From Oculina patagonica (lineage: Eukaryota), in assembly GCF_052425735.1 (NCBI RefSeq), contig NC_135768.1, forward strand, positions 22,940,001-23,004,000: a DNA stretch of 64,000 nucleotides, read 5' to 3'. Position numbers and translations under genes: made by a program. Numbering within the stretch: position 1 is the stretch's first letter; each line of letters opens with the position of its first letter. This document shows positions 47,813 to 63,570 of this stretch, in pieces. Below the pieces are notes generated by a model. It was given only the letters and a program-made list of their open reading frames with translations, made no database searches and was not told where the DNA came from.

Positions 47813-50148
47813 TATATTGAAATTCAAGTATTTATTAAAAATTATATTATTTTCTATTATAGTTATCAATGTTTCTGCTGGATATTTTTCAAACAAAGTT
47901 GTCATTTGGAAGCTGATAATGAGGTTTACTTTCCATACATGGATGCGTGAAGTCATCCCAGATTCACATCTATTATGGCAACCAACTGAAGAGGTCATAG
48001 AGGAAACTGGTTTTGAAGTCACATATGTTACATAAATGTGTGTTGAAAATAAATGCAACTGAGATCTTTCCTTATCAAGATTCTGTTTAGTTACGCATTC
48101 TATTCATATCAGTTCTCCTTACTTATTCCCATACATCTCTTTTAATGTTCATTATGAGAAAATGGTGGTCCATCAAGACAGTATCCCCTAGCTGATGAAT
48201 GTCTTTGTTCTCGCCACTTGACTGGTGGACAATAGACTAACGATGTAAGGAGAAACCAGTTGTTGATCACTTGATTTCAGTCATGTCAATAAAGGCTTCG
48301 AGTTGGCCTTCTTTTGAGGATTGTTTTAGATTGAGATCCTTTGAAATAGAGCCTGCAAAGAAACAAGAAAAAACAACTTAAGATTTGCAAGCAAAAGATA
48401 GCTAGAACTGACGTTTAGATTTGTGTGGCTTATTAACTTGAATGGGCCTTGGGGTCACAAGGAAAAAACATTTATTGAGAACAAAGGACATCAACCTTTC
48501 TTCATAAATGAACCAATAACATTGAAATATAACCATTACCTAATACTGGCACATCACTGAGTTACTTGCCGAGCATGTTTCCTTCTCTTAAAAACGCATT
48601 TGTAATTCCTTAAAGGAAAGTTAAATGTTACTTTTAGTGCAAAACTACTATAAAGCTTGATGTAACATTCAAACCCAAACCATTGATATTGCACAAAAGA
48701 ACCCATTCAGCACAAAAACTTACATTGCATCAGTCAATAACCAACAAATCCCCTTATGTTCTCCTACACTCTCTGAAAGGTTCAGTTCTCTTCTAACATC
48801 AGACACACCTACACCAAACACATTAATGGGAACACAATGTATGTTACTCAAGTATTTCAACCAAGTGTGAAATATTACTGACAAACCTACAACCTTTTGG
48901 TCACTGTATAAATGGATCGAGGAATTACTGACACAGATATAACAATGTGTGGTTCCAGAAAATGTCCATACTCCCCCCATAGAAGGGATTGGAAATTCCT
49001 GGGGGTGGGAGGGGTCTCAAAGGCCAAACATTTTAAGGAAATGTATGAAGCTTAATTGGAATAATCAGAAGAGGTGGGGGGGGGGGGTCTTAGGAAAAAT
49101 CCCTTCTGTGGGGGAGGTATGGATAATTTATGGAACAACACAATGATGTTCCACAGCTAGAAACAAAGCCAAATATTTATTCTAGGCAGTAAAATTTGAA
49201 GGTACACTTAAAGTCAGGGCTTGAGACTAACTTTATTGCTAGCTAGCCAATTGGCTTGTGACAGCTTTGACTTCACTAGCCAAAACTTACTTATTAATAA
49301 CAAGCTACAGTAACTAAGGTTTGGTGACAGCAACAGCACATTGAATGAAATTGCAACAAAAGCCAACCTTTCTAACAGAGATGTCATGCGACAAAAAGTA
49401 TGATTCATAAAACTCCAACATAGGACATTTTTAAATTCAGAGAAGCATTACAGAACTCTCCCCTGGCAGAATTTACTCAAAACTAGCTCTGACTAAAAAC
49501 CTTTAGAATATGTAAAGAAATGCAAAATGATAGAAATAACATAAAGCATACAGATTGTAATAAATACCATTTTTCTTAGGTCCTCTATCTTCACACCACA
49601 GCATTATCTCTGCTACTTAGCAAGAAACCTATTGACACATCAGCAAGCCATTTGATCCTTGTCTGTGTTGACTGGTAATGGTACTCGGCTTAAAAACAAG
49701 GTAAATGGACTCAATTTATCATCAATTTTTCAACTGAAAACAAATGCTTAATTGGCTTATTGTTGCTTAATAGCAGAATGTATGTGTTAAGGAAATATGT
49801 GTAAAGTTTTTTGGCTCTTTACTCCTCCTACTTTAATATTGTAAAAATTCCCATAACATTTGCTCCCTAGTTCTTTCTTTTTGCAAACAAATTTCATAAA
49901 TTTAGAAGATACACAGATTGCAATAAATACCATTTTTTCTAGGTCCTCTATCTTCGCACCATGGCATCATCTCTGCTATTTAGCAAGGAACCTATTGACA
50001 CAGCAGCAAGTCACTGGTCCTTGTCTGTGTACACTGGAACCCAACTAAGGGAGAACAGTCACATGATCAGTAAAAATGTAGTATTAGTAGTGTATATACC
50101 GGGTAATAGAAACTCAGACCATATAGGCAAACTCTGATAATAACATAA

Positions 50149-50296
50149 TGTAAGGGTTTATTCGCCACCCCACCCCAGACAGTTTTTGGAATAAGTCACG
50201 TGATGTAGTCGACCACGCGGTCGAGTTGAGCTAGAGAATAAAAACATGGACAAGTTGAGGGTTTTATTGCTTTTATTCCGGCGACCACGTCTAACA
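50149..50296 (+). repeat. 5' LTR
   Basis: tgtaagggtttattcgcc...ccacgtctaaca; matches 56650-56797. Confidence 0.96.
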
Positions 50297-50424
50297 TTTG
50301 GCGACCCTGCCAGGACAGTCACTCAGGCAAATTTGCCTGAAAGTAGTGACAGTGAGATGCTGAATTAAGGAGAACGACTGCCTTCGTTACGTTTGGATCC
50401 GTTTGTTTGTGTTTGGAAATCAAG

Positions 50425-51756
50425 ATGGCGGCTGAAAATGAAATCGAGGAACTTCAACTGCAAATTGAGTCTAAAGTATGTGGCCTTACAACGGATGGGC
50501 TTAAAGAATTAGCAGAACACTTGCAAGTGGAGGCGAAAGAGCTGGGAAGATTGGCGTTGTCGAGGAAAATCCGCGAGAAAATCGAACAGGAATTAACCGA
50601 AGCGGACGACAAGAAGACATTGTTGGTCGGTCTCCTTGCATTTGTGGATGGAAAACCACCGCCGCTCGAGGTTCCAACAGCGACGGAAGTGAAAGTTGAA
50701 CCGCCTAACTCATCAGAAAAAGCGACTGGGAAAGCACAAGTAGCAGAGACAAAGGTAAATGTTGATGTTAGTAAGGTGCTAAGGCGTGATTTCAAAATCC
50801 ATGGAGTTGTGGCGGGAGATAGTTTTAAGGATGGGCTGTCATTTGTAAGTTTGGTGCAGCAGATAGAATCCGGGGTAAAGGCTGGCTACAAAGAGAGTGA
50901 GATTGTCGAAGCTGTTATTCGTGCAGTTAGCCCAAGCCTTACATTGAGGTCGTACTTAGAGATGATACAGGATTTATCGTTGTCTCGCTTAAGGCAGATT
51001 ATGAGGGCCCATTTTAAGCAAAAGTCAGCAACGGAACTGTATCAGGAACTGTCTGTCTTACGCCAGGAAACAAATGAATCCCCCCAAGATTTTCTTGTAC
51101 GGGCCTTGAACTTAAAACAGCAGATTATTTTTGTGTCAAATGCAACTGATGGTTCTATCAAGTATGAGCCCTCTCTGGTTCAGGCACTGTTCCTGCATGT
51201 ATTAGAAACAGGGTTACAGGATGAGGCTGTTAGAGCTAAATTACGCCCTTTACTAGAAGTAGCATCTGTAACTGATGAACAGCTAATGGAGAAGATTAAT
51301 CAGATTATGTCTGCGGAGACAGAACATCAAAATAAGATGGGTGTGGCTGGCAGGAAAGGGGCAAGGGTTAGTCAGATTGAAACCCCCTCAGCTCCCAGTG
51401 ATGTTCAACCCCAGCCAAATTCAAGTCAAGTGCCCCAGGGTGAATGTAGTAAGTCCCAGAAAAAGGAACCAAAGCCAAATACTCTTGTAACAGCATTGGA
51501 AGCAGTGCAGTCCAACCTTGCCTCTCTGAAAGCAGCTTTTGATAGGGTCAGTGCCCCAGTGGAAAGAAATTCTGCCCGGCAATATACATCTGGTAATCGG
51601 CCACAGTTTCGGCGTCGCCAGTGCAGTGTATGTAGTTCAGCGGGTGTGGACAACTGTGATCATTGCTTCAAGTGTGGGTCCACAGATCACTTTGCAAGAG
51701 GATGTAAAAAGGGTTTGGGAAACGAGAGGAGGCTACACCAGCGGGACAGGGTGTAG
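50425..51756 (+). CDS. gag: Gag (capsid-like region + CCHC zinc knuckle)
   Basis: ATG in caagATGG context; '[16 protein letters not shown]' major-homology-like motif; [14 protein letters not shown] knuckle preceded by an extra CxxC..CxH. Confidence 0.92.
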
Positions 51757-54700
51757 TCGGAGCAGTCTCGTCCCATGCCTGCAAGTTCTGCGGAAACAAA
51801 GAAGGTACTTTCTCTTTCAAACAGTGCAGTAATTGTAAAGCTGTTAGATATTGTTCAAGGAAATGTCAACAGAAACACTGGAAACAACATAAGACACTTT
51901 GCCAGGCCATATCGTTTTTAGAAGAGCGAAAGTCTAGAGAAAATAGAGAAAAGACAGGTGTCTTTGTGAGCCATTTGTCACCACAGGAGCATGCACAGGT
52001 AGTTCGTCTTGTAGGACGGAAATGTTCTGTTAAATGTTTGCTTAATGGGGTAGAGACGGAGGCCCTCTGGGATACAGGAGCTCAAGTGTCAATTGTTTCG
52101 CGAAGTTGGTTGAGGCGATGTCTTCCAGGTTGTGACATTCGAGACATAGCAGAGTTGTTGGGCATGGATGGGCTTGATTTGAAGGCTGCAAATGGAACTG
52201 ACCTTCCCTATGAAGGTTGGGTGGAACTGACTTTTAACCTTATTGAAAATGACTTTGACCACACTGTTAAAGTAACATTCTTGGTTGCCAAGGATACCCT
52301 GGATATGCCTATTGTTGGATTTAATGTTATTGAAGAGATCACCAAGCAGCCTGAATGTGGTGTTCCAGTTGGAGCTGACGGATCAATGGTGGATGTGCTT
52401 TCATCGAGTTTAACTGGCGTTGAGCGAGACAAAGTGGAGGCCCTTGTCCAGCTTATCAAATCTGAACCTGCAAAGGAACTGTCTACTGTTAAGTCAAGAA
52501 AGCAAGACACTGTAATTCCTCGAGGACAGTCTGTTATTGTGTCGTGTCGTGCTGCAGTAGGTCCAGTTAGTAAGATACCAGTGTTGTTTGAACTTGACCC
52601 AAACCAATCATGGCCTAGTGGTCTGGAGATACCAGAGACACAAGTAACTGTAGCAGGGGGTTCCACTTGTCGAGTCAACATCCGCGTGGATAATCCAACA
52701 AAACATGACATCACTTTGAAAGGAAGAACAGCACTAGGACACCTTCAGCAAGTGAAATCAGTCACTCCTCTTGAAGTGAAATTAAAAGAGGCGAGTTCAT
52801 CCAGTGAACATATTGCAGAATCTTCAAATGCTGACATAGGAGAACAGTGTATGGATGAGGGTGGTGACAACAATTGTGAAGAACAGTCATGTAGCTTCAT
52901 TCCTGATGTTGACACTGAGGAACTTACCGAGGAACAGCGTACCATAGTTAGAGAAATGCTTGTAGAGGAAGCAGAGTCATTCTCCAAGACAGATGATGAT
53001 GTTGGAAGGGCAGAGGAATTACAAGTCAACATTAACCTCACTGATTCAGTACCAGTTCAGAGAAAGTACACTGCCATTCCCAGACCACTTTACGCCGAAG
53101 TCAAGCAGTATGTTGAGGATTTGTTGAACCGAGGGTGGATCCAAAAGTCAAGGTCAGCTTATTCGTCCCCTGTTGTATGTGTTCGTAAAAGGGACGGGTC
53201 ATTAAGACTGTGCATAGACTATAGACAGTTGAATTTAAAGACAGTGCGTGACAGCCATCCCTTGCCTAGGGTGCAGGATGCTTTGGAAAGTCTTGGTGGG
53301 AATCAATGGTTCTCCTTGCTAGATCAAGGGAAGGCCTATCATCAGGGTTTTGTTAGTCCTGAAAGTAGACACAAAACTGCCTTTGCCACTCCTTGGGGAC
53401 TGTATGAATGGGTGCGCCTACCCATGGGCTTGAAAAATGCACCAGGGGAATTCCAGAGGTTTATGGAACATTGTCTTGATGGCCTGAGAGATGACATATG
53501 TATACCCTACATCGATGACATTATTGTGTTCAGCAAAACATTCGAAGAACATGTTGACCATATTCGCAAAGTGCTTCAACGGTTACGTGAACATGGGGTC
53601 AAACTTAAACCCAGGAAGTGCAGACTCTTTAAGCGAGAAGTAAACTATCTTGGACAGATTGTATCAGCCGCAGGGTACAGACTAGACCCTTCCAATGTAG
53701 AAGCAGTCAGAACTTTGAAAGACAACAAGCCAGGAACCGTTGGTGAGGTGAGGAAGTTACTGGGTCTCCTTGGATACTACCGCAGGTACATCCAAAACTT
53801 TGCTAGGATTGCCCATCCACTCTTTCAGTTGTTACAAGGAGCTTCTGATGATGTGACTAAATCAGTACACAAAAGTAAGCAACGCTCCAATCACGGGTCA
53901 GTACCATCTTCTCAACCAGTCGTGTGGATGGAACAGCATCAGAAGGCGGTTGAAACATTGTTAAGTCACCTTGTATGTCCTCCAATTCTTGGCTACCCTG
54001 ATTTCAGTAAGCCGTTTGTATTACATACTGATGCATCGCAAGAGGGACTGGGTGCAGTCTTGTATCAGAAACAAGAAGGTAAAATGAGAGTAATTGGTTA
54101 TGGCTCACGATCACTGACCAAGGCAGAAAAGAACTATTTCCTCCACTCGGGAAAGCTTGAGTTCTTAGCCCTTAAGTGGGCTGTGTGCGAACATTTCAGA
54201 GACTACCTCTACCATGCGCCTGACTTTACTGTGTATACCGATAATAACCCCCTCACATATGCACTGACTACCGCCAAGTTGAATGCGACCAGACATCGCT
54301 GGGTAGCGGAGCTTGCAGATTTCTCATTCACAATCAAGTATAGACCAGGACACTCAAACAAGGATGCAGACGCACTCTCAAGATTGCCAATGGACATTGA
54401 TTCCTACATGAAGTTATGTACTGAGAAGGTATCCCAGAGTGATATCATGGCATGCTGTGTAGGAGTAGGAGCACTAGGGCAAGGGGAGGCTATCTGGGTG
54501 TCTGCAATGAGTAATGACTCTGACCTATTGAACATTGATGAAGTGTCCCTTGGTTCTTACATGACTGAAATTAGTAAACCATCTCTTATCAATGCCCAGA
54601 AACAAGACAAAGTGATAGGAAGACTGCTAACCTTCCTGACGACAGGAAAATGGCCTAAGACGTGGGAGATTAAGCGTGAGCTACCGGCCACAAGGGTGTT

Positions 54701-56441
54701 ATTGAGACAACGAAGCAAACTCTACTGTGATAAGGATGGCCTGTTGTTTAGGAAAAGTGGACCATTTTCCCAGCTGGTGCTACCTCAGAAATTTCACACT
54801 CTTGTCTTCAAGGAACTCCATCAGGAGATGGGACACTTAGGAGCACCTCGTGTAGTCCAGCTAGCGTGTGAACGATTCTACTGGCCAAACATGGAAGATG
54901 ATATTACTCACTTTGTGACAAAAGTTTGCTCATGTCTAAAACAACGGCAGCCAAATTTGTCTACAAGAGCACCATTACACAGTGTGACTACCTCGTATCC
55001 CTTTGAATTAGTGTCAATCGACTTCTTACATTTGGAGCCAAGTTCCGGTGGTTATAAGTACATCTTAGTTATCATTGATCATTTTACCCGTTTCGCACAA
55101 GCATATGCAACAAAGAACAAGTCAGCTACAACTGCAGCTGATCGGTTGTTTAATGACTTTGTACTGCGATTTGGTTTCCCGGCAAAGATACTCCACGATC
55201 AAGGACGGGAGTTTGAAAACAAACTCTTTCACAAATTGGAAGAGCTTAGTGGTGTCACACGCCTTCGAACAACACCTTACCATCCGCAAGGCAACGGGAA
55301 GGTAGAAAGATTTAACAGGACATTGCTACATATGTTAAGAACTCTTCCAGAAAGCAAGAAACAAAAATGGAAGGACTCCCTGAACAAAGTTGTACATGCT
55401 TATAACTCCACCAGAAGCGACGCCACTGGTTTTTCTCCCTTCTATTTGTTGTTTGGGCGCCCACCACGCCTTCCAGTTGACCTAATGTTTGGACTTTCAC
55501 GCCAAGAAATTGGTATGAATCATGCAGAGTACACAGAGAAATGGAAGGTTGCCATGAAAGAAGCCTACACATTGGCCAGCAAGAGTATGTCCAAATCGGC
55601 CGGGGATGGAAAGAAACAGTATGACCGAAAAGTAAGATTCTCTGATTTACAGCCAGGAGACCGGGTATTAGTGCGTAACCTCTCAGAGCGTGGTGGGCCC
55701 GGAAAGCTTAGGTCTCATTGGGAGCAACAAGTACACATTGTAGTGGAACAAAAGGGTGGTTTACCTGTATATGAAGTAACATCAGAGGCGCAAGGAGGCA
55801 AAGCAAGAATACTTCACAGAAATCTTCTGTTGCCTTGTGACTTCTTGCCTGTTGATCCTCCAGAACCTGTTTCCCAGCACACGCAAGAGAGAAGGAGAAA
55901 ATCAGTCCCTGTGGAACAGCAAGAACAGGAAGCCCATCAGCCTGACTATCACAGTGACAGTGGGGATGAGGGGGAGCTACCTGGTCTCTCACCCACCGAG
56001 TTGGATTTGTTGCAGTTCTCTACATCAGCCACAGAAGTTGACAATTGTGAACAAGAGCAAGTTGACTGTGCAGTGGATGAGTCATTACCTGAGGATGTAG
56101 AGGAATTGACAGAACAGGAGGAGGTATCAGTTATGGATGACCAGTCTTTATCTGACTCGGAGCAGGACCTTTCCCCACAGCAAGAGTCAGCTGGACCCCG
56201 GCGGTTTCCTGTGCGAAACCGCCACCCACCAAGTGTTCTTTCTTATGATACCCTAGGGAACCCCAGTTACCATCAAGCGACAACGGCAACTGTGTCTACA
56301 AATCCATTTATTTATGTTCCAGCCTTACCCTATCCGCCGCCCTTGTCCTTTGTGCCTTACGGAATGCAGAACTATTGGATGACAACTTATTTGCCAGTGT
56401 ACCCAAGTTGTGCACCATTTGTGCCCACAATGGCTGTTTAA
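51708..56441 (+). CDS. pol: Pol (MYND finger - protease - RT - RNase H - integrase), -1 frame relative to gag
   Basis: Frame open from 51708. [31 protein letters not shown], integrase HHCC and DDE core (SIDF, HDQG, VERFN). Confidence 0.95.
51717..51774 (+). other. -1 programmed ribosomal frameshift signal
   Basis: G_GGA_AAC heptamer in the gag frame, 7-nt spacer, stem GGCTACACC/GGTGTAGTC, loop GGGAC complementary to downstream GTCCC. Confidence 0.8.
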
Positions 56442-56649
56442 GCAAGTTACGTGGTTATAGAAGCTGAAGTCTGGAACTTATTGAACTTTTATCAAACTCT
56501 TTTATCATGTTTTGTTTCTTACAAGAAAAAAACAATTATACTTGTTCAGTGAAAAATTGTTAAACAATTTGTGCCAGGATGTCGTTAGCCAACCCAATAC
56601 TTCGTCCGATGTCCAGGAGGACATCTTTTTTTTTTTTTAGAGGGGTGTA

Positions 56650-56797
56650 TGTAAGGGTTTATTCGCCACCCCACCCCAGACAGTTTTTGGAATAAGTCAC
56701 GTGATGTAGTCGACCACGCGGTCGAGTTGAGCTAGAGAATAAAAACATGGACAAGTTGAGGGTTTTATTGCTTTTATTCCGGCGACCACGTCTAACA
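56650..56797 (+). repeat. 3' LTR
   Basis: Identical to the 5' LTR by inspection. Confidence 0.96.
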
Positions 56798-58461
56798 ATA
56801 ACAATAATGTTGTATACCACTTGTAATAAATTGTTAAGTAAAAAACATCCAAAGGCCATAACTAGCTATACTACATTTCATTTTATTATGACTCACCCAG
56901 AAGAACACAGCTGGTGTAATTGTCTTTTTCCTCCACATTCATCACTCTTAGAAAACTTGCCCTGCACAAGTCAACATCCATCCCAGTCTGGAAGATCAAA
57001 GAAAACACAATTAAGATTGACCACTTGTAAATGGATGGATCCATGTTGTTTTGCTATAACAACACATTCTTGAAGATACTTATAACCTCAATTTGATAAT
57101 TTATGTACAGTGATAATTTAATACTTCCATGTTGTTTTGCTGTAATGTTCAACACATTCTCAAAGGCACAAATTAACCTCTGACACATAAAGGGAAAATG
57201 TACGATTTTGTTTGCTTTTTTGTGGTTACACTTGTAAGAGACAGGTTCCAGGCCATAGACTCCTCTGGATCCAGTATAACTTAAGATCTTCAAGGAAGGA
57301 AGCCCTCAGATATGACCAAATGCCGGGTTTTCTCACATCACACACACATCACTGATGTGATCACTTCCCTACTACAGTACTGAAGAAGTTCTGATAATAA
57401 GCTCCATGGTCCTTCTAATTGAAAACAAGTCCCATAAATTTGAAATTAATACAAACTTAAATAAATACCATTTTTCTTAGGTCCTCTATCTTCGCACCAT
57501 GGCATCATCTCTGCTATTTAGCAAGGAACCTATTGACACAACAGCACGTCATTTGATCCTTGTCTTTGTACACTGGAATCCAACAAAGAAGAAAATTAAG
57601 TTATTATAATGATCAGTAAAATGTAGCATTATAAAACTTAATTCTTCTCGAAAACATGTCTCATAACACAGATTTTAGTAAATACCATTTTTCTCAGGTC
57701 CTCTATCTTCACATCACAGCATCTCTGCTATTGAGCAAGGAACCTTTTGATACAGCTCCAAGTTATTGGATCCTTTGTCCATGTACACTGGAACCCACCT
57801 ACAAAAAAGGTTATTATAAAATTAATGATCAGTAAAAAAAATAGCATTTTAAAAATTAAAAGCCACTGATAACAACATTATTATGTATACCACTTGTAAT
57901 AAATTGCTAAGTCGCAAACATGACTCACCCAGAAGAACGCTGCTGTAATATTTCCTTTCCCTCCAAATTCATCATTCTTGGAATTTTTGCCCTGCATAGT
58001 CAACATCCAGTATCCCAATCTGGAAGATTAAAGAAAACACAAAGCAGATTAACCCTTTATAGCATTAGCATTTGCTGTAACAACACATAAAATATCTGAA
58101 AATATGCTCCAACACAGTATTTCTCAAATACACAAGGGAAAACTAACATTTTTTTTCTGAAAAACTAACAAGAAAGGATAGCTAATTTAAACTGGTGTTA
58201 TTTTCAAAACAGAGTTAGTCTCCTCTACTAACTCTGTTCAAAATAAGCGTGTAAAAAAGTTAGCTTACCGTCCGCCATCTTGGAATATGAACGTGAAACT
58301 GCTGGACATCTACCATTTGTACTGTTGTCTCAAGAGACTCACTTCCTCCCCAGGCTCTTCTCTTCTTTTGAGGTTGCAAGCTGTAAGCTATCATATTCCA
58401 ACATAGCCCTTCGTAGCCATACTTTACACATACCAATGTAATTTGACCAGGAATAGCGCTA

Positions 58462-62219: not shown

Positions 62220-62999
62220 CTGGGAATCACTCACGCTCTATTTCCATCATGGCTCTGTAGTTCAGATGGTAGAGCAGTGGACCTGTAACCAAAATGTCGT
62301 GGGTTGGAATCCCACCTAAGCCACTGAACATTTTTCAGTGGTCACTGCAGTGTTTTAGTTTAGAATCATCTTCAGTAATATAAATGAGTGAATGAAATGG
62401 AACAATGGACCTGTAACTTGATGGTTATGGGTTCGAATCCCAACCTTTCTCTTCCACTGAAAAGTACAACCCTTTGATCTGATCTTATCTAAATATGTTA
62501 TTTAGCCATATATATCGAGTATTTTGCATTCTCATTTTGATACTTCAGTCCAACTGACATAAAGACAGTTCGTTCTCTGACCAAATGAACACAGGCACAC
62601 GCTCAGGTTTCCTGCACTTGCACTGGCAGGGGAGTCATGTCTTCACAAGCACTCGCAATGGCAGTCATTCTGGCACTGGCTCTGTACCATGAGGTCAGAC
62701 GGAAGAAATAAAGGCCGCAATATTTAGAGAGGAAGCCACATCAGCCGTAGCTGGTTTTCATGCGGGTCCTCTGTCCAGATCGAATTAGAATTTGAAAATG
62801 TTGGAGAAAAACCCAAAATAACAACCTCAGTCAAGCTACTTAGTCATTTACATTCATACTTTACCCTTCATAACAGTTTGGCGGGCAGCCACGATCTTTT
62901 TCCTGTCTAATGTAATTCATAACTGACAAGTTAGTAAACTTAACAATTATTCCACAAACTCGCAAACTCTTGAATATGAGATGGCCGACTATGGTCGTT

Positions 63000-63030
<31 letters not shown>

Positions 63031-63570
63031 TTTATTAATAGAGCGATCAAACGCCTTTAAACCCCACCTAAGGTCGCTTTCTTGTCAATGGTCAGATTTT
63101 ACAGTGTATTTAAGTTTATAACCATTCTATGGCATACAAATGAGTGAATCGAATGAGATTCACTCATGCGCTTTTCCCATCGTAGCGCTGTAGCTTAGAT
63201 GGTAGAGCAGTTAACCTGATGTGGTGTGGGTTCGAATCCCAGCTAAGCGACTGATTTTTTTTAAGCGGTCAGGATTAATTGTGTATTTTAATTTAGAATT
63301 ATCCTCAGGTATATAAATGAGTGAAACAACTGGGAATCACTCACGCTCTATTCCCATCATGGCACTGTAGCTCAGATGGTAGAGCAGTGGACCTGTAGTT
63401 CGTGGGTTCGAACCCCATCTGTTTTTAATTTTATTTTAGAATCATCTACAGGCATATTTCTGAGTGAATCAACTGGGAGTCACTCACACTCTATTCCCAT
63501 CATAGCTCTGTAGCTTAGATGGTAGAGCAGTGGACTTATAACCTGAAGCTTGTGGGTTTGAATCCCACAA
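62220..63570 (+). repeat. Array of degenerate tRNA-like units
   Basis: Repeated 'cactcacgctctattcccatcatggctctgtagctcagatggtagagcagtggacctg...gtgggttcgaatccc' at about 62230, 63160, 63340 and 63480, plus partial copies. Confidence 0.75.

What the first reader, a model, noticed from the sequence alone, without database searches (positions are those of the whole stretch)
51780..51902. MYND zinc finger at the start of Gypsy Pol, missed by the ORF track
Seen: in the pol frame upstream of the annotated start, CKFC-x11[26 protein letters not shown], a canonical MYND pattern lying between the frameshift site and the protease. It would be made only in Gag-Pol. Known: MYND fingers bind Pro-rich (PxLxP-type) motifs in chromatin and co-repressor proteins (ETO, BS69, DEAF1) and are not a standard retrotransposon domain. 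Inference: a captured host interaction module that could serve integration targeting, anti-silencing or particle assembly.
Basis: partly seen in the sequence, partly recalled or inferred. Interest (0 to 1): 0.8.

Follow-up and report, generated by a model that had tools for sequence, protein, structure and literature searches.

The report
MYND finger in coral Gypsy Gag-Pol
A young jumping gene in a stony coral carries a real MYND zinc-finger (a protein-docking module) just ahead of its protease. It is made only when the ribosome frameshifts, it is shared by a large group of related coral elements, and I found no paper describing it.

Summary
Window 51780-51902 encodes a complete MYND finger (Pfam zf-MYND, E 4.7e-12, 46 bits against a cut-off of 22.7) in the pol frame of an LTR retrotransposon at 50149-56797. 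This element has uninterrupted gag and pol frames, identical 148-bp LTRs and the target-site duplication ATAA.

The finger lies 3' of a canonical -1 frameshift signal: G_GGA_AAC, a 7-nt spacer and an H-type pseudoknot with covariation across six families. No start codon precedes it in the pol frame, so it can be made only as part of Gag-Pol.

It is not a recent capture. At least six divergent families in this genome and about half of the 120 closest Pol proteins elsewhere carry it at the same place. The zinc ligands and the Gln/Trp pair that contacts PXL-type peptides in ETO, BS69 and PHD2 are invariant or nearly so. On an RT-IN tree it occurs in every major branch. Only a nested teleost clade lacks it, which fits one gain and one loss. 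All named carriers are anthozoans.

The function is inferred, not shown: a proline-motif docking module acting on Gag-Pol around assembly or maturation. Integration targeting fits its position poorly. A predicted complex with a Gag PPPLE motif gave no verdict.

The parts
50145..50148 (+). Target-site duplication ATAA, 5' copy
   Evidence: Read from the sequence. The same 4 bases follow the 3' LTR at 56798-56801.
50149..50296 (+). 5' LTR, 148 bp, TG...CA
   Evidence: 100% identical to 56650-56797.
50299..50316 (+). Putative primer-binding site beginning TGG, 2 nt after the LTR
   Evidence: Read from the sequence. The matching tRNA was not identified.
50425..51756 (+). gag (443 codons plus stop), with a CX2CX4HX4C zinc knuckle at about 51661-51711
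   Evidence: ORF and translation. Pfam zf-CCHC is weak, E 0.0044, below its cut-off. It is homologous to the gag of related coral and teleost elements.
51717..51723 (+). -1 frameshift slippery heptamer G_GGA_AAC, in the gag frame
   Evidence: It is conserved in phase in families A, B, C and G; E has GGGAAAT (families as labelled).
51731..51774 (+). H-type pseudoknot: stem 1 51731-51739 with 51750-51758 (it contains the gag stop); stem 2 51743-51747 with 51770-51774
   Evidence: Alignment A1 and pair counts: 92.9% of cells paired, 8 pairs with changes on both sides, 0 of 500 shuffles as high, and the signal collapses when partners are slid.
51708..56441 (+). pol frame, open for 1577 codons, -1 relative to gag
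51780..51902 (+). MYND zinc finger (Pol residues 25-65)
   Evidence: Pfam E 4.7e-12; PDB relatives; AF2 pLDDT 88-96; Foldseek top hits are all MYND domains; ligands invariant.
51903..52019 (+). Helix continuing out of the MYND (to about residue 81), a flexible linker, and the conserved SHL(S/T)P...LVGxKC lead-in to the protease
   Evidence: AF2 secondary structure and pLDDT; alignment A2. The linker motif is also present in the teleost relatives that lack the MYND.
52020..52352 (+). Retropepsin-type aspartic protease (DTGA at 52071)
   Evidence: Foldseek best hits are Ddi1 RVP, M-PMV and EIAV proteases. Pfam gag-asp_proteas is weak.
53181..54323 (+). Reverse transcriptase and RNase H
   Evidence: Pfam RVT_1 E 8e-33, RT_RNaseH E 6e-30.
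54783..55415 (+). Integrase (H2C2 zinc domain plus catalytic core)
   Evidence: Pfam Integrase_H2C2 E 4e-11, rve E 3e-13.
55605..56438 (+). Acidic, then Pro/Tyr/Gln-rich C-terminal tail of Pol; no chromodomain
   Evidence: Translation; no Pfam hit; comparison of tails.
56639..56649 (+). Polypurine tract region next to the 3' LTR
   Evidence: Read from the sequence.
56650..56797 (+). 3' LTR
56798..56801 (+). Target-site duplication ATAA, 3' copy

Best explanation
SHOWN. The stretch encodes a genuine, selectively maintained MYND zinc finger. It forms the N-terminal ('transframe') part of Pol in a Ty3/Gypsy LTR retrotransposon. It is translated only when ribosomes shift -1 at G_GGA_AAC, stimulated by a conserved pseudoknot, so it exists only on the minority Gag-Pol species. 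It is ancestral to a large clade whose named hosts are all anthozoans, and it was lost once in a nested teleost group.

INFERRED. It works as other MYND fingers do. A zinc-stabilised beta-hairpin and helix docks a short PXL-type proline motif (PXLXP, PPPLI or PXLE) through the conserved Ser41, Gln54 and Trp58. It sits directly upstream of the protease and far from integrase. The docking therefore most likely acts on Gag-Pol before or during particle assembly and protease maturation. It could bring a partner to Gag-Pol or tether Gag-Pol. The partner is unknown. Candidates are a host PXL-motif protein, such as an HSP90 co-chaperone or a co-repressor, or the element's own Gag PPPLE motif.
For: Domain identity: Pfam, PDB sequence matches, a confident AF2 model, and Foldseek hits 1-43 that are all MYND domains at 1-3 A rmsd.

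Gag-Pol only: the pol frame has no start codon before the finger. The slippery site and pseudoknot show covariation: 92.9% paired, 8 compensated pairs, 0 of 500 shuffles.

Conservation: 32 loci in at least 6 families of this genome at 38-50% identity keep the finger. In the 27-sequence alignment C25, C28, C40, C43, Y48, C49, C53, Q54, H57, H61 and C65 are invariant and W58 nearly so. Of the top 120 Pol relatives, 26 proteins have the full finger and about 29 are cut inside it by the called start codon. The P0001 element, called without it, has it in the DNA. dN/dS of the finger against that element is 0.24.

Phylogeny: the finger occurs in every major branch; the 8 teleost proteins without it form one nested clade at 100 support.

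Breadth: at least 54 of the best 149 clusters at 50% identity show MYND plus the protease linker. A further 347 fragment clusters include Porites lobata, Paramuricea clavata and Oculina patagonica.

Ligand residues: DEAF-1 M512, E514, T516, Q529 and W533 are the co-repressor-binding residues (PMC3555993). They align with F37, Q39, S41, Q54 and W58. The equivalent Gln and Trp contact the PXL motif in ETO, BS69 and PHD2 (PMC6916684).
Against: There is no direct evidence of zinc or peptide binding, of frameshifting, or of expression. No public run holding the element is on record as RNA. The predicted complex of the finger with the Gag PPPLE segment gave no verdict (score 0.08). The Gag PXLE motif sits at the same linker position in only 4-5 of 13 MYND-bearing families. 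The protease cleavage sites are unknown, so it is not known whether the finger stays with NC, stays with the protease or is released. The tree is FastTree only and rooted on one long outgroup branch. Many rows have unknown state because the called proteins start downstream. Most carriers come from unnamed assemblies.
Confidence: 0.65

Rival explanations
1. Integration targeting or anti-silencing. The MYND binds a chromatin or co-repressor protein (N-CoR/SMRT type) and steers the pre-integration complex, or blunts repression, as chromodomains do in chromoviruses.
For: The closest solved relatives, DEAF-1 and ETO, bind the SMRT/N-CoR PPPLI motif, and the binding residues are conserved here.
Against: The finger is at the opposite end of Pol from integrase and is separated from it by the protease, RT and RNase H. 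Known targeting modules are fused to integrase (established knowledge of chromoviruses and Ty5, not tested here). Insertion sites were not analysed. Only three full-length copies of this family exist in the genome.
Confidence: 0.12
2. Ligand-independent regulator of the protease. A folded zinc module, possibly self-associating, in the transframe position times protease dimerisation and auto-processing, as the HIV-1 p6* region does.
For: It sits immediately upstream of the protease, joined to it by a low-confidence flexible linker. The isolated DEAF-1 MYND self-associates with a Kd of about 0.5 uM (PMC3555993). Teleost relatives keep the linker and protease but have another ~60-residue segment where the finger would be.
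Against: The invariance of Gln54 and Trp58, which are surface ligand-contact residues rather than zinc ligands, is better explained by peptide binding.
Confidence: 0.15
3. An extra nucleic-acid-binding zinc finger that extends nucleocapsid function on Gag-Pol.
For: It follows the NC zinc knuckle closely and is basic.
Against: The DEAF-1 MYND, despite its beta-beta-alpha fold, failed to interact specifically with DNA (PMC3555993). Gag already has its own CCHC knuckle.
Confidence: 0.05
4. A neutral passenger or a chance Cys-rich stretch with no function.
For: None beyond the lack of experimental data.
Against: All ligands are kept across families at 35-55% identity and on every major branch of the tree. 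dN/dS is 0.24. The Pfam score is twice the cut-off.
Confidence: 0.03

Closest known systems
Chromoviruses (Ty3/Gypsy elements with a chromodomain on integrase)
   Same: An LTR-retrotransposon clade defined by a host-type protein-interaction module that is kept clade-wide within Pol.
   Different: A different fold (MYND, not chromodomain), at the opposite end of Pol (before the protease, not after integrase), with no chromodomain here. The chromodomain's targeting role is established; the MYND's role is unknown.
Transframe / junction regions of retroelement Gag-Pol (HIV-1 p6*, Ty3 junction)
   Same: The same position between NC and the protease, present only in the frameshift product.
   Different: Those are short peptides without a recognised fold (my knowledge, not tested here). 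Here the position holds a complete two-zinc domain followed by a long helix.
Cellular MYND fingers: DEAF-1, ETO/CBFA2T, PHD2/EGLN1, ZMYND10, SMYD1-3
   Same: The C4-C2HC ligand pattern, the predicted beta-beta-alpha fold (rmsd about 2 A to 2od1 and 2jw6), and the conserved Ser/Thr, Gln and Trp of the PXL-peptide groove.
   Different: It is embedded in a retroelement polyprotein. His57 is invariant where ETO and DEAF-1 have Asp. No ligand is known.
Teleost sister elements (for example proteins annotated 'Gypsy retrotransposon integrase-like protein 1' in Oryzias, Nothobranchius and Takifugu)
   Same: Homologous gag, NC knuckle, protease lead-in motif, RT and IN at 45-50% identity; nested inside the MYND-bearing clade.
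   Different: gag and pol form one open frame, there is no MYND, and there is no Pro/Tyr/Gln-rich tail.

Membership tests
zf-MYND (Pfam PF01753) | Profile score above the curated cut-off over the whole model | tested here: met
   46.2 bits against 22.7, model positions 1-39 of 39.
zf-MYND (Pfam PF01753) | C4-C2HC ligand set with MYND spacing | tested here: met
   C25, C28, C40, C43, C49, C53, H61 and C65 are invariant in 27 sequences. They align ligand for ligand with DEAF-1 and ETO.
zf-MYND (Pfam PF01753) | Cross-brace beta-beta-alpha fold | tested here: met
   AF2 pLDDT 88-96. Foldseek ranks 1-43 are all MYND domains, with TM 0.63-0.66 normalised to 2od1 and 2jw6. E-values are weak (0.06 or worse) because the domain is small.
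zf-MYND (Pfam PF01753) | Residues of the PXL-peptide groove (Ser/Thr after Cys3, Gln after Cys6, Trp four residues later) | tested here: met
   S41 mostly conserved, Q54 invariant, W58 at least 90% conserved. Their roles come from PMC3555993 and PMC6916684.
zf-MYND (Pfam PF01753) | Binds two zinc ions and a proline-motif peptide | not testable with these tools
   The complex prediction with Gag PPPLE gave no verdict.
Ty3/Gypsy LTR retrotransposon | LTRs with TG..CA ends, target-site duplication, PBS and PPT | tested here: met
   148-bp identical LTRs, ATAA duplication, TGG-initiated PBS, purine tract.
Ty3/Gypsy LTR retrotransposon | Pol order protease - RT - RNase H - integrase | tested here: met
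   Pfam domains in that order; protease fold.
Programmed -1 ribosomal frameshift signal | X_XXY_YYZ heptamer in the upstream frame, a 5-9 nt spacer, and a downstream structure | tested here: met
   G_GGA_AAC in the gag phase, a 7-nt spacer, and a pseudoknot with 8 compensated pairs.
Programmed -1 ribosomal frameshift signal | Measured frameshifting | not testable with these tools
   Needs a reporter assay.
Chromovirus | Chromodomain at the integrase C-terminus | tested here: not met
   No chromodomain hit in the 1577-residue Pol at E up to 0.01.

The most novel reading that the evidence does not exclude
The MYND is a dedicated adaptor that only Gag-Pol carries. One reading is that it docks a PXLE/PPPL motif in the element's own Gag (PPPLE at 50656-50670, recurring at the same position in families A, B and C and in P0091). 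That would position or restrain the protease until assembly. The other reading is that it recruits a PXLE-bearing HSP90 co-chaperone to fold the polymerase, as PHD2's MYND recruits p23. Either would be a new way for a retroelement to control Gag-Pol, and one that defines a whole anthozoan clade.
Probability: 0.2. Interest if true: 0.75.

Novelty: new variant of a known kind. Interest (0 to 1): 0.6.

Why it matters
The accessory domains of LTR retrotransposons that I know of are few: chromodomain, envelope, dUTPase and a second RNase H. A review of them held in the library contains no mention of MYND. Each known accessory domain has explained something about how the elements deal with their hosts.

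A two-zinc protein-docking module fixed for a long time in the transframe position is a different arrangement. It is present only on the frameshift product and sits beside the protease. It also gives a simple handle for experiments, since the isolated domain and peptide libraries are enough to start. With it one could ask how Gag-Pol is recruited, folded or held inactive in a non-model animal lineage.

There are two practical points. ORF-based annotation systematically cuts this domain off, because pol has no start codon of its own. And at least one such element is filed in a bacterial MAG.

Tried and rejected
1. A predicted complex of MYND (Pol 18-90) with the Gag segment containing PPPLE and two Zn gave no verdict (score 0.08; the mark is 0.34). 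It counts neither for nor against binding.

2. Expression. No run holding the element is on record as RNA. The runs laid were Logan contigs of uncertain type, so transcription is unresolved.

3. A word-based homology search restricted to residues 20-115 found only 3 proteins because of its word limit. It was superseded.

4. Naming the source organisms of the ENA, Logan and JGI relatives failed. Cluster look-ups and contig records gave no taxa. The Atlas returned the same single cnidarian cluster three times.

5. Co-occurrence of the MYND with the Pro/Tyr/Gln-rich Pol tail was rejected as a strict rule. P0094, P0101 and P0118 have the finger but a short tail.

6. The MYND-only matches inside long open frames elsewhere in the genome are host genes (TPR + beta-helix + MYND), not other transposons.

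7. Folding the RNA downstream of the heptamer on its own gave an unremarkable z-score of -1.15. The comparative pair counts were the informative test.

8. Nine literature searches (eight pairing MYND with retroelement terms) found no description of a MYND in a retroelement.

I did not assign the clade to a named Gypsy lineage (Mag, SURL and so on). No reference set was available.

Full report
WHAT IS THERE

The finding lies inside a complete LTR retrotransposon at window 50149-56797.
- The two LTRs are 148 bp, 100% identical and end TG..CA.
- They are flanked by the 4-bp duplication ATAA.
- A TGG-initiated primer-binding site follows the 5' LTR, and a purine tract precedes the 3' LTR.
- gag runs from 50425 to 51756 and ends in a CX2CX4HX4C knuckle.
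- The pol frame is open from 51708 to 56441 in the -1 frame. It gives protease, RT, RNase H and integrase in the Ty3/Gypsy order, with no chromodomain.

- Residues 25-65 of the pol frame (nt 51780-51902) match Pfam zf-MYND over the whole model at E 4.7e-12 and 46.2 bits, against a cut-off of 22.7.
- By sequence, the nearest solved domains are the MYND fingers of DEAF-1, ETO, ZMYND10 and SMYD2/3.
- AlphaFold2 models with family alignments give pLDDT 88-96 for the finger. A helix runs on to about residue 81, a floppy linker follows, and then comes a confident retropepsin domain.
- Foldseek on the longer model, which includes the protease, finds Ddi1, M-PMV and EIAV proteases.
- Foldseek on the shorter model, which ends at the protease lead-in, returns only MYND domains in ranks 1-43, at about 1-3 A rmsd. 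The E-values are weak because the domain is so small.
- The mechanical ORF list starts pol at GTG 51966, so the finger was indeed missed.

IT CAN BE MADE ONLY AS GAG-POL

No ATG, GTG or TTG lies in the pol frame between the stop at 51705-51707 and the finger.

In the gag frame the canonical slippery heptamer G_GGA_AAC sits at 51717-51723. A 7-nt spacer follows, then a 9-bp stem (51731-39 with 51750-58) that encloses the gag stop codon. The loop bases GGGAC (51743-47) can pair with GTCCC (51770-74), two codons before the first Cys of the finger. This is an H-type pseudoknot.

The same layout occurs in four other families of this genome and in an unrelated metagenomic contig. On their alignment:
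- 92.9% of cells are paired;
- 8 of 14 pairs carry changes on both sides;
- none of 500 shuffles reaches these values;
- pairing drops to 24-46% when partners are slid by 1-3 columns.

One family (L014) instead has G_UUA_AAC followed by a hairpin. The conserved peptide 'AT(P/T)AGQG' ahead of the finger is therefore probably conserved for the RNA, not for the protein.

IT IS OLD AND MAINTAINED

In this genome the N-terminal 307 residues of Pol find 77 matches. Of these, 32 align from residue 9 or earlier, that is, through the finger. They fall into at least six families at 38-50% identity, and all have the finger in the same place. A seventh coral Gypsy family (L039) starts Pol directly with the protease. 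So the finger is not a general feature of this coral's elements.

Among the 120 closest Pol proteins in the public collection:
- 26 proteins show the complete finger;
- about 29 begin at a methionine inside it;
- most of the rest begin just downstream.

This is an artefact of start-codon calling. For P0001, which was called without the finger, the contig DNA encodes it upstream of the called start.

In a 27-sequence alignment all eight ligands, plus Tyr48, Gln54 and His57, are invariant and Trp58 nearly so. The flanks vary freely. Against the P0001 element, dN/dS is 0.24 for the finger, from only 12 changes, and 0.11 for all of Pol.

A tree built from the protease-to-integrase part, with the MYND columns excluded, finds the finger in every major branch, including the basal ones. 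The eight proteins that have enough upstream sequence and lack it are all teleost. They form one nested clade with 100 support, and close to that clade sit rows (P0094, P0101) that carry the finger. The simplest history is one gain at or before the base of the clade and one loss.

In the teleost elements gag and pol are a single frame. Another ~60-residue segment stands where the frameshift signal and finger would be, while the NC knuckle and the SHLxP...LVGxKC lead-in to the protease are kept.

BREADTH

A profile of the finger plus linker finds 1342 representatives (clusters at 50% identity) at E 1e-10 or better. The top ranks are cellular proteins with many MYND repeats. At least 54 of the best 149 are single-finger proteins that continue into the protease lead-in.

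A profile search among short proteins gives 347 clusters at E 1e-15 or better. The only named ones are from Porites lobata, Oculina patagonica and the octocoral Paramuricea clavata. The protein atlas points to one cnidarian cluster. Several full elements come from Tara and JGI metagenome assemblies without a named host. The documented range is therefore Anthozoa; anything wider is unknown.

HOW IT PROBABLY WORKS (INFERENCE)

In DEAF-1 the residues that bind the SMRT/N-CoR PPPLI peptide are Met512, Glu514, Thr516, Gln529 and Trp533 (PMC3555993). By the alignment these correspond to Phe37, Gln39, Ser41, Gln54 and Trp58.

[quoted passage not shown] PHD2's finger binds PXLE in the HSP90 co-chaperone p23 (PMC6916684).

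Gln54 and Trp58 are surface residues, not zinc ligands, so their invariance argues for a conserved peptide ligand.

The finger is next to the protease and about 1000 residues from integrase. I therefore rate a role at the Gag-Pol stage (assembly, partner recruitment or protease timing) above integration targeting.

A candidate internal ligand exists. Gag has PPPLE at 50656-50670. The same linker position reads PPPLE in family B, PPLE in family C, PELE in P0091 and PTLD in P0118. It is absent from eight other MYND-bearing families and from the fish. The complex prediction for this pair gave no verdict.

STATE OF THE COPIES (DESCRIPTION ONLY)

This family has three full-length copies in the assembly (100, 98 and 98% identical to the window copy), one rearranged copy and a few fragments or solo LTRs. 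In the window copy both frames are uninterrupted. In the other two full-length copies the pol frame is open for 1211 and 988 codons around the matched region. I built no consensus and repaired no frame.

PRIOR KNOWLEDGE

Eight full-text searches combining MYND with Gypsy, Ty3, LTR, polyprotein, Gag-Pol, accessory domain and coral found no description of a MYND finger in a retroelement. The domain combination is visible in database proteins such as the Oculina and Paramuricea entries, but as far as I could find it is uncommented. The library does not cover subscription journals or Repbase reports, so an earlier mention cannot be excluded.

VERDICT

This is a new variant of a known kind: a Ty3/Gypsy clade defined by a MYND finger in the transframe position, whose function is still to be tested.

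Noticed in passing
window 55900-56438; proteins: Most invertebrate members end Pol in a long Pro/Tyr/Gln-rich low-complexity tail after the conserved LTYDxLGxPS motif. Here it includes PPPLS. The teleost relatives and a few MYND-bearing ones stop right after that motif.
   Followed up: partly
L014/L034 (G000:C1:13635400-13644400): One MYND-bearing family has replaced the GGGAAAC-pseudoknot signal with G_UUA_AAC plus a 6-bp hairpin. Its own GGGAAAC is out of phase with gag.
   Followed up: partly
window 51708-52352 compared with L048: Synonymous divergence between this element and the P0001 element is 0.3-0.4 in the first ~215 codons of pol but about 1.0 in RT, RNase H and IN. This could reflect RNA-level constraint or recombination.
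   Followed up: no
window 49509-50049 and 57401-57801: Copies of a ~140-190-nt dispersed repeat (73-89% alike) lie on both sides of the element, so it inserted into a cluster of another repeat.
   Followed up: no
window 62220-63568: Three copies of a ~96-140-nt repeat contain a tRNA-like segment, as a tRNA-derived SINE would.
   Followed up: no
L037 (G000:C11:7032500-7040500) and L038 (G000:C5:15025500-15033500): Host open frames of about 915 residues combine DUF7779, TPR repeats, a right-handed beta-helix and a C-terminal MYND finger. In L037 a separate retroelement pol lies downstream.
   Followed up: partly
P0182-P0215: Proteins with many tandem MYND fingers, up to 13 matched stretches in 918 residues, top the representative search. 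At least 67 of the best 149 have three or more fingers.
   Followed up: no
P0167 = RUA05110.1; L043 (JGI 3300021980): A full MYND-Gypsy element is filed as a hypothetical protein of a 'Gammaproteobacteria bacterium' MAG. This is most likely eukaryotic DNA binned by mistake.
   Followed up: no
P0002 (Oculina patagonica ACROYT_G028661): The gene model joins gag to pol through a false intron that removes the first half of the finger and the frameshift region.
   Followed up: partly
L041 (Tara scaffold): Two MYND-bearing elements lie head to tail on one 11-kb metagenomic scaffold.
   Followed up: no
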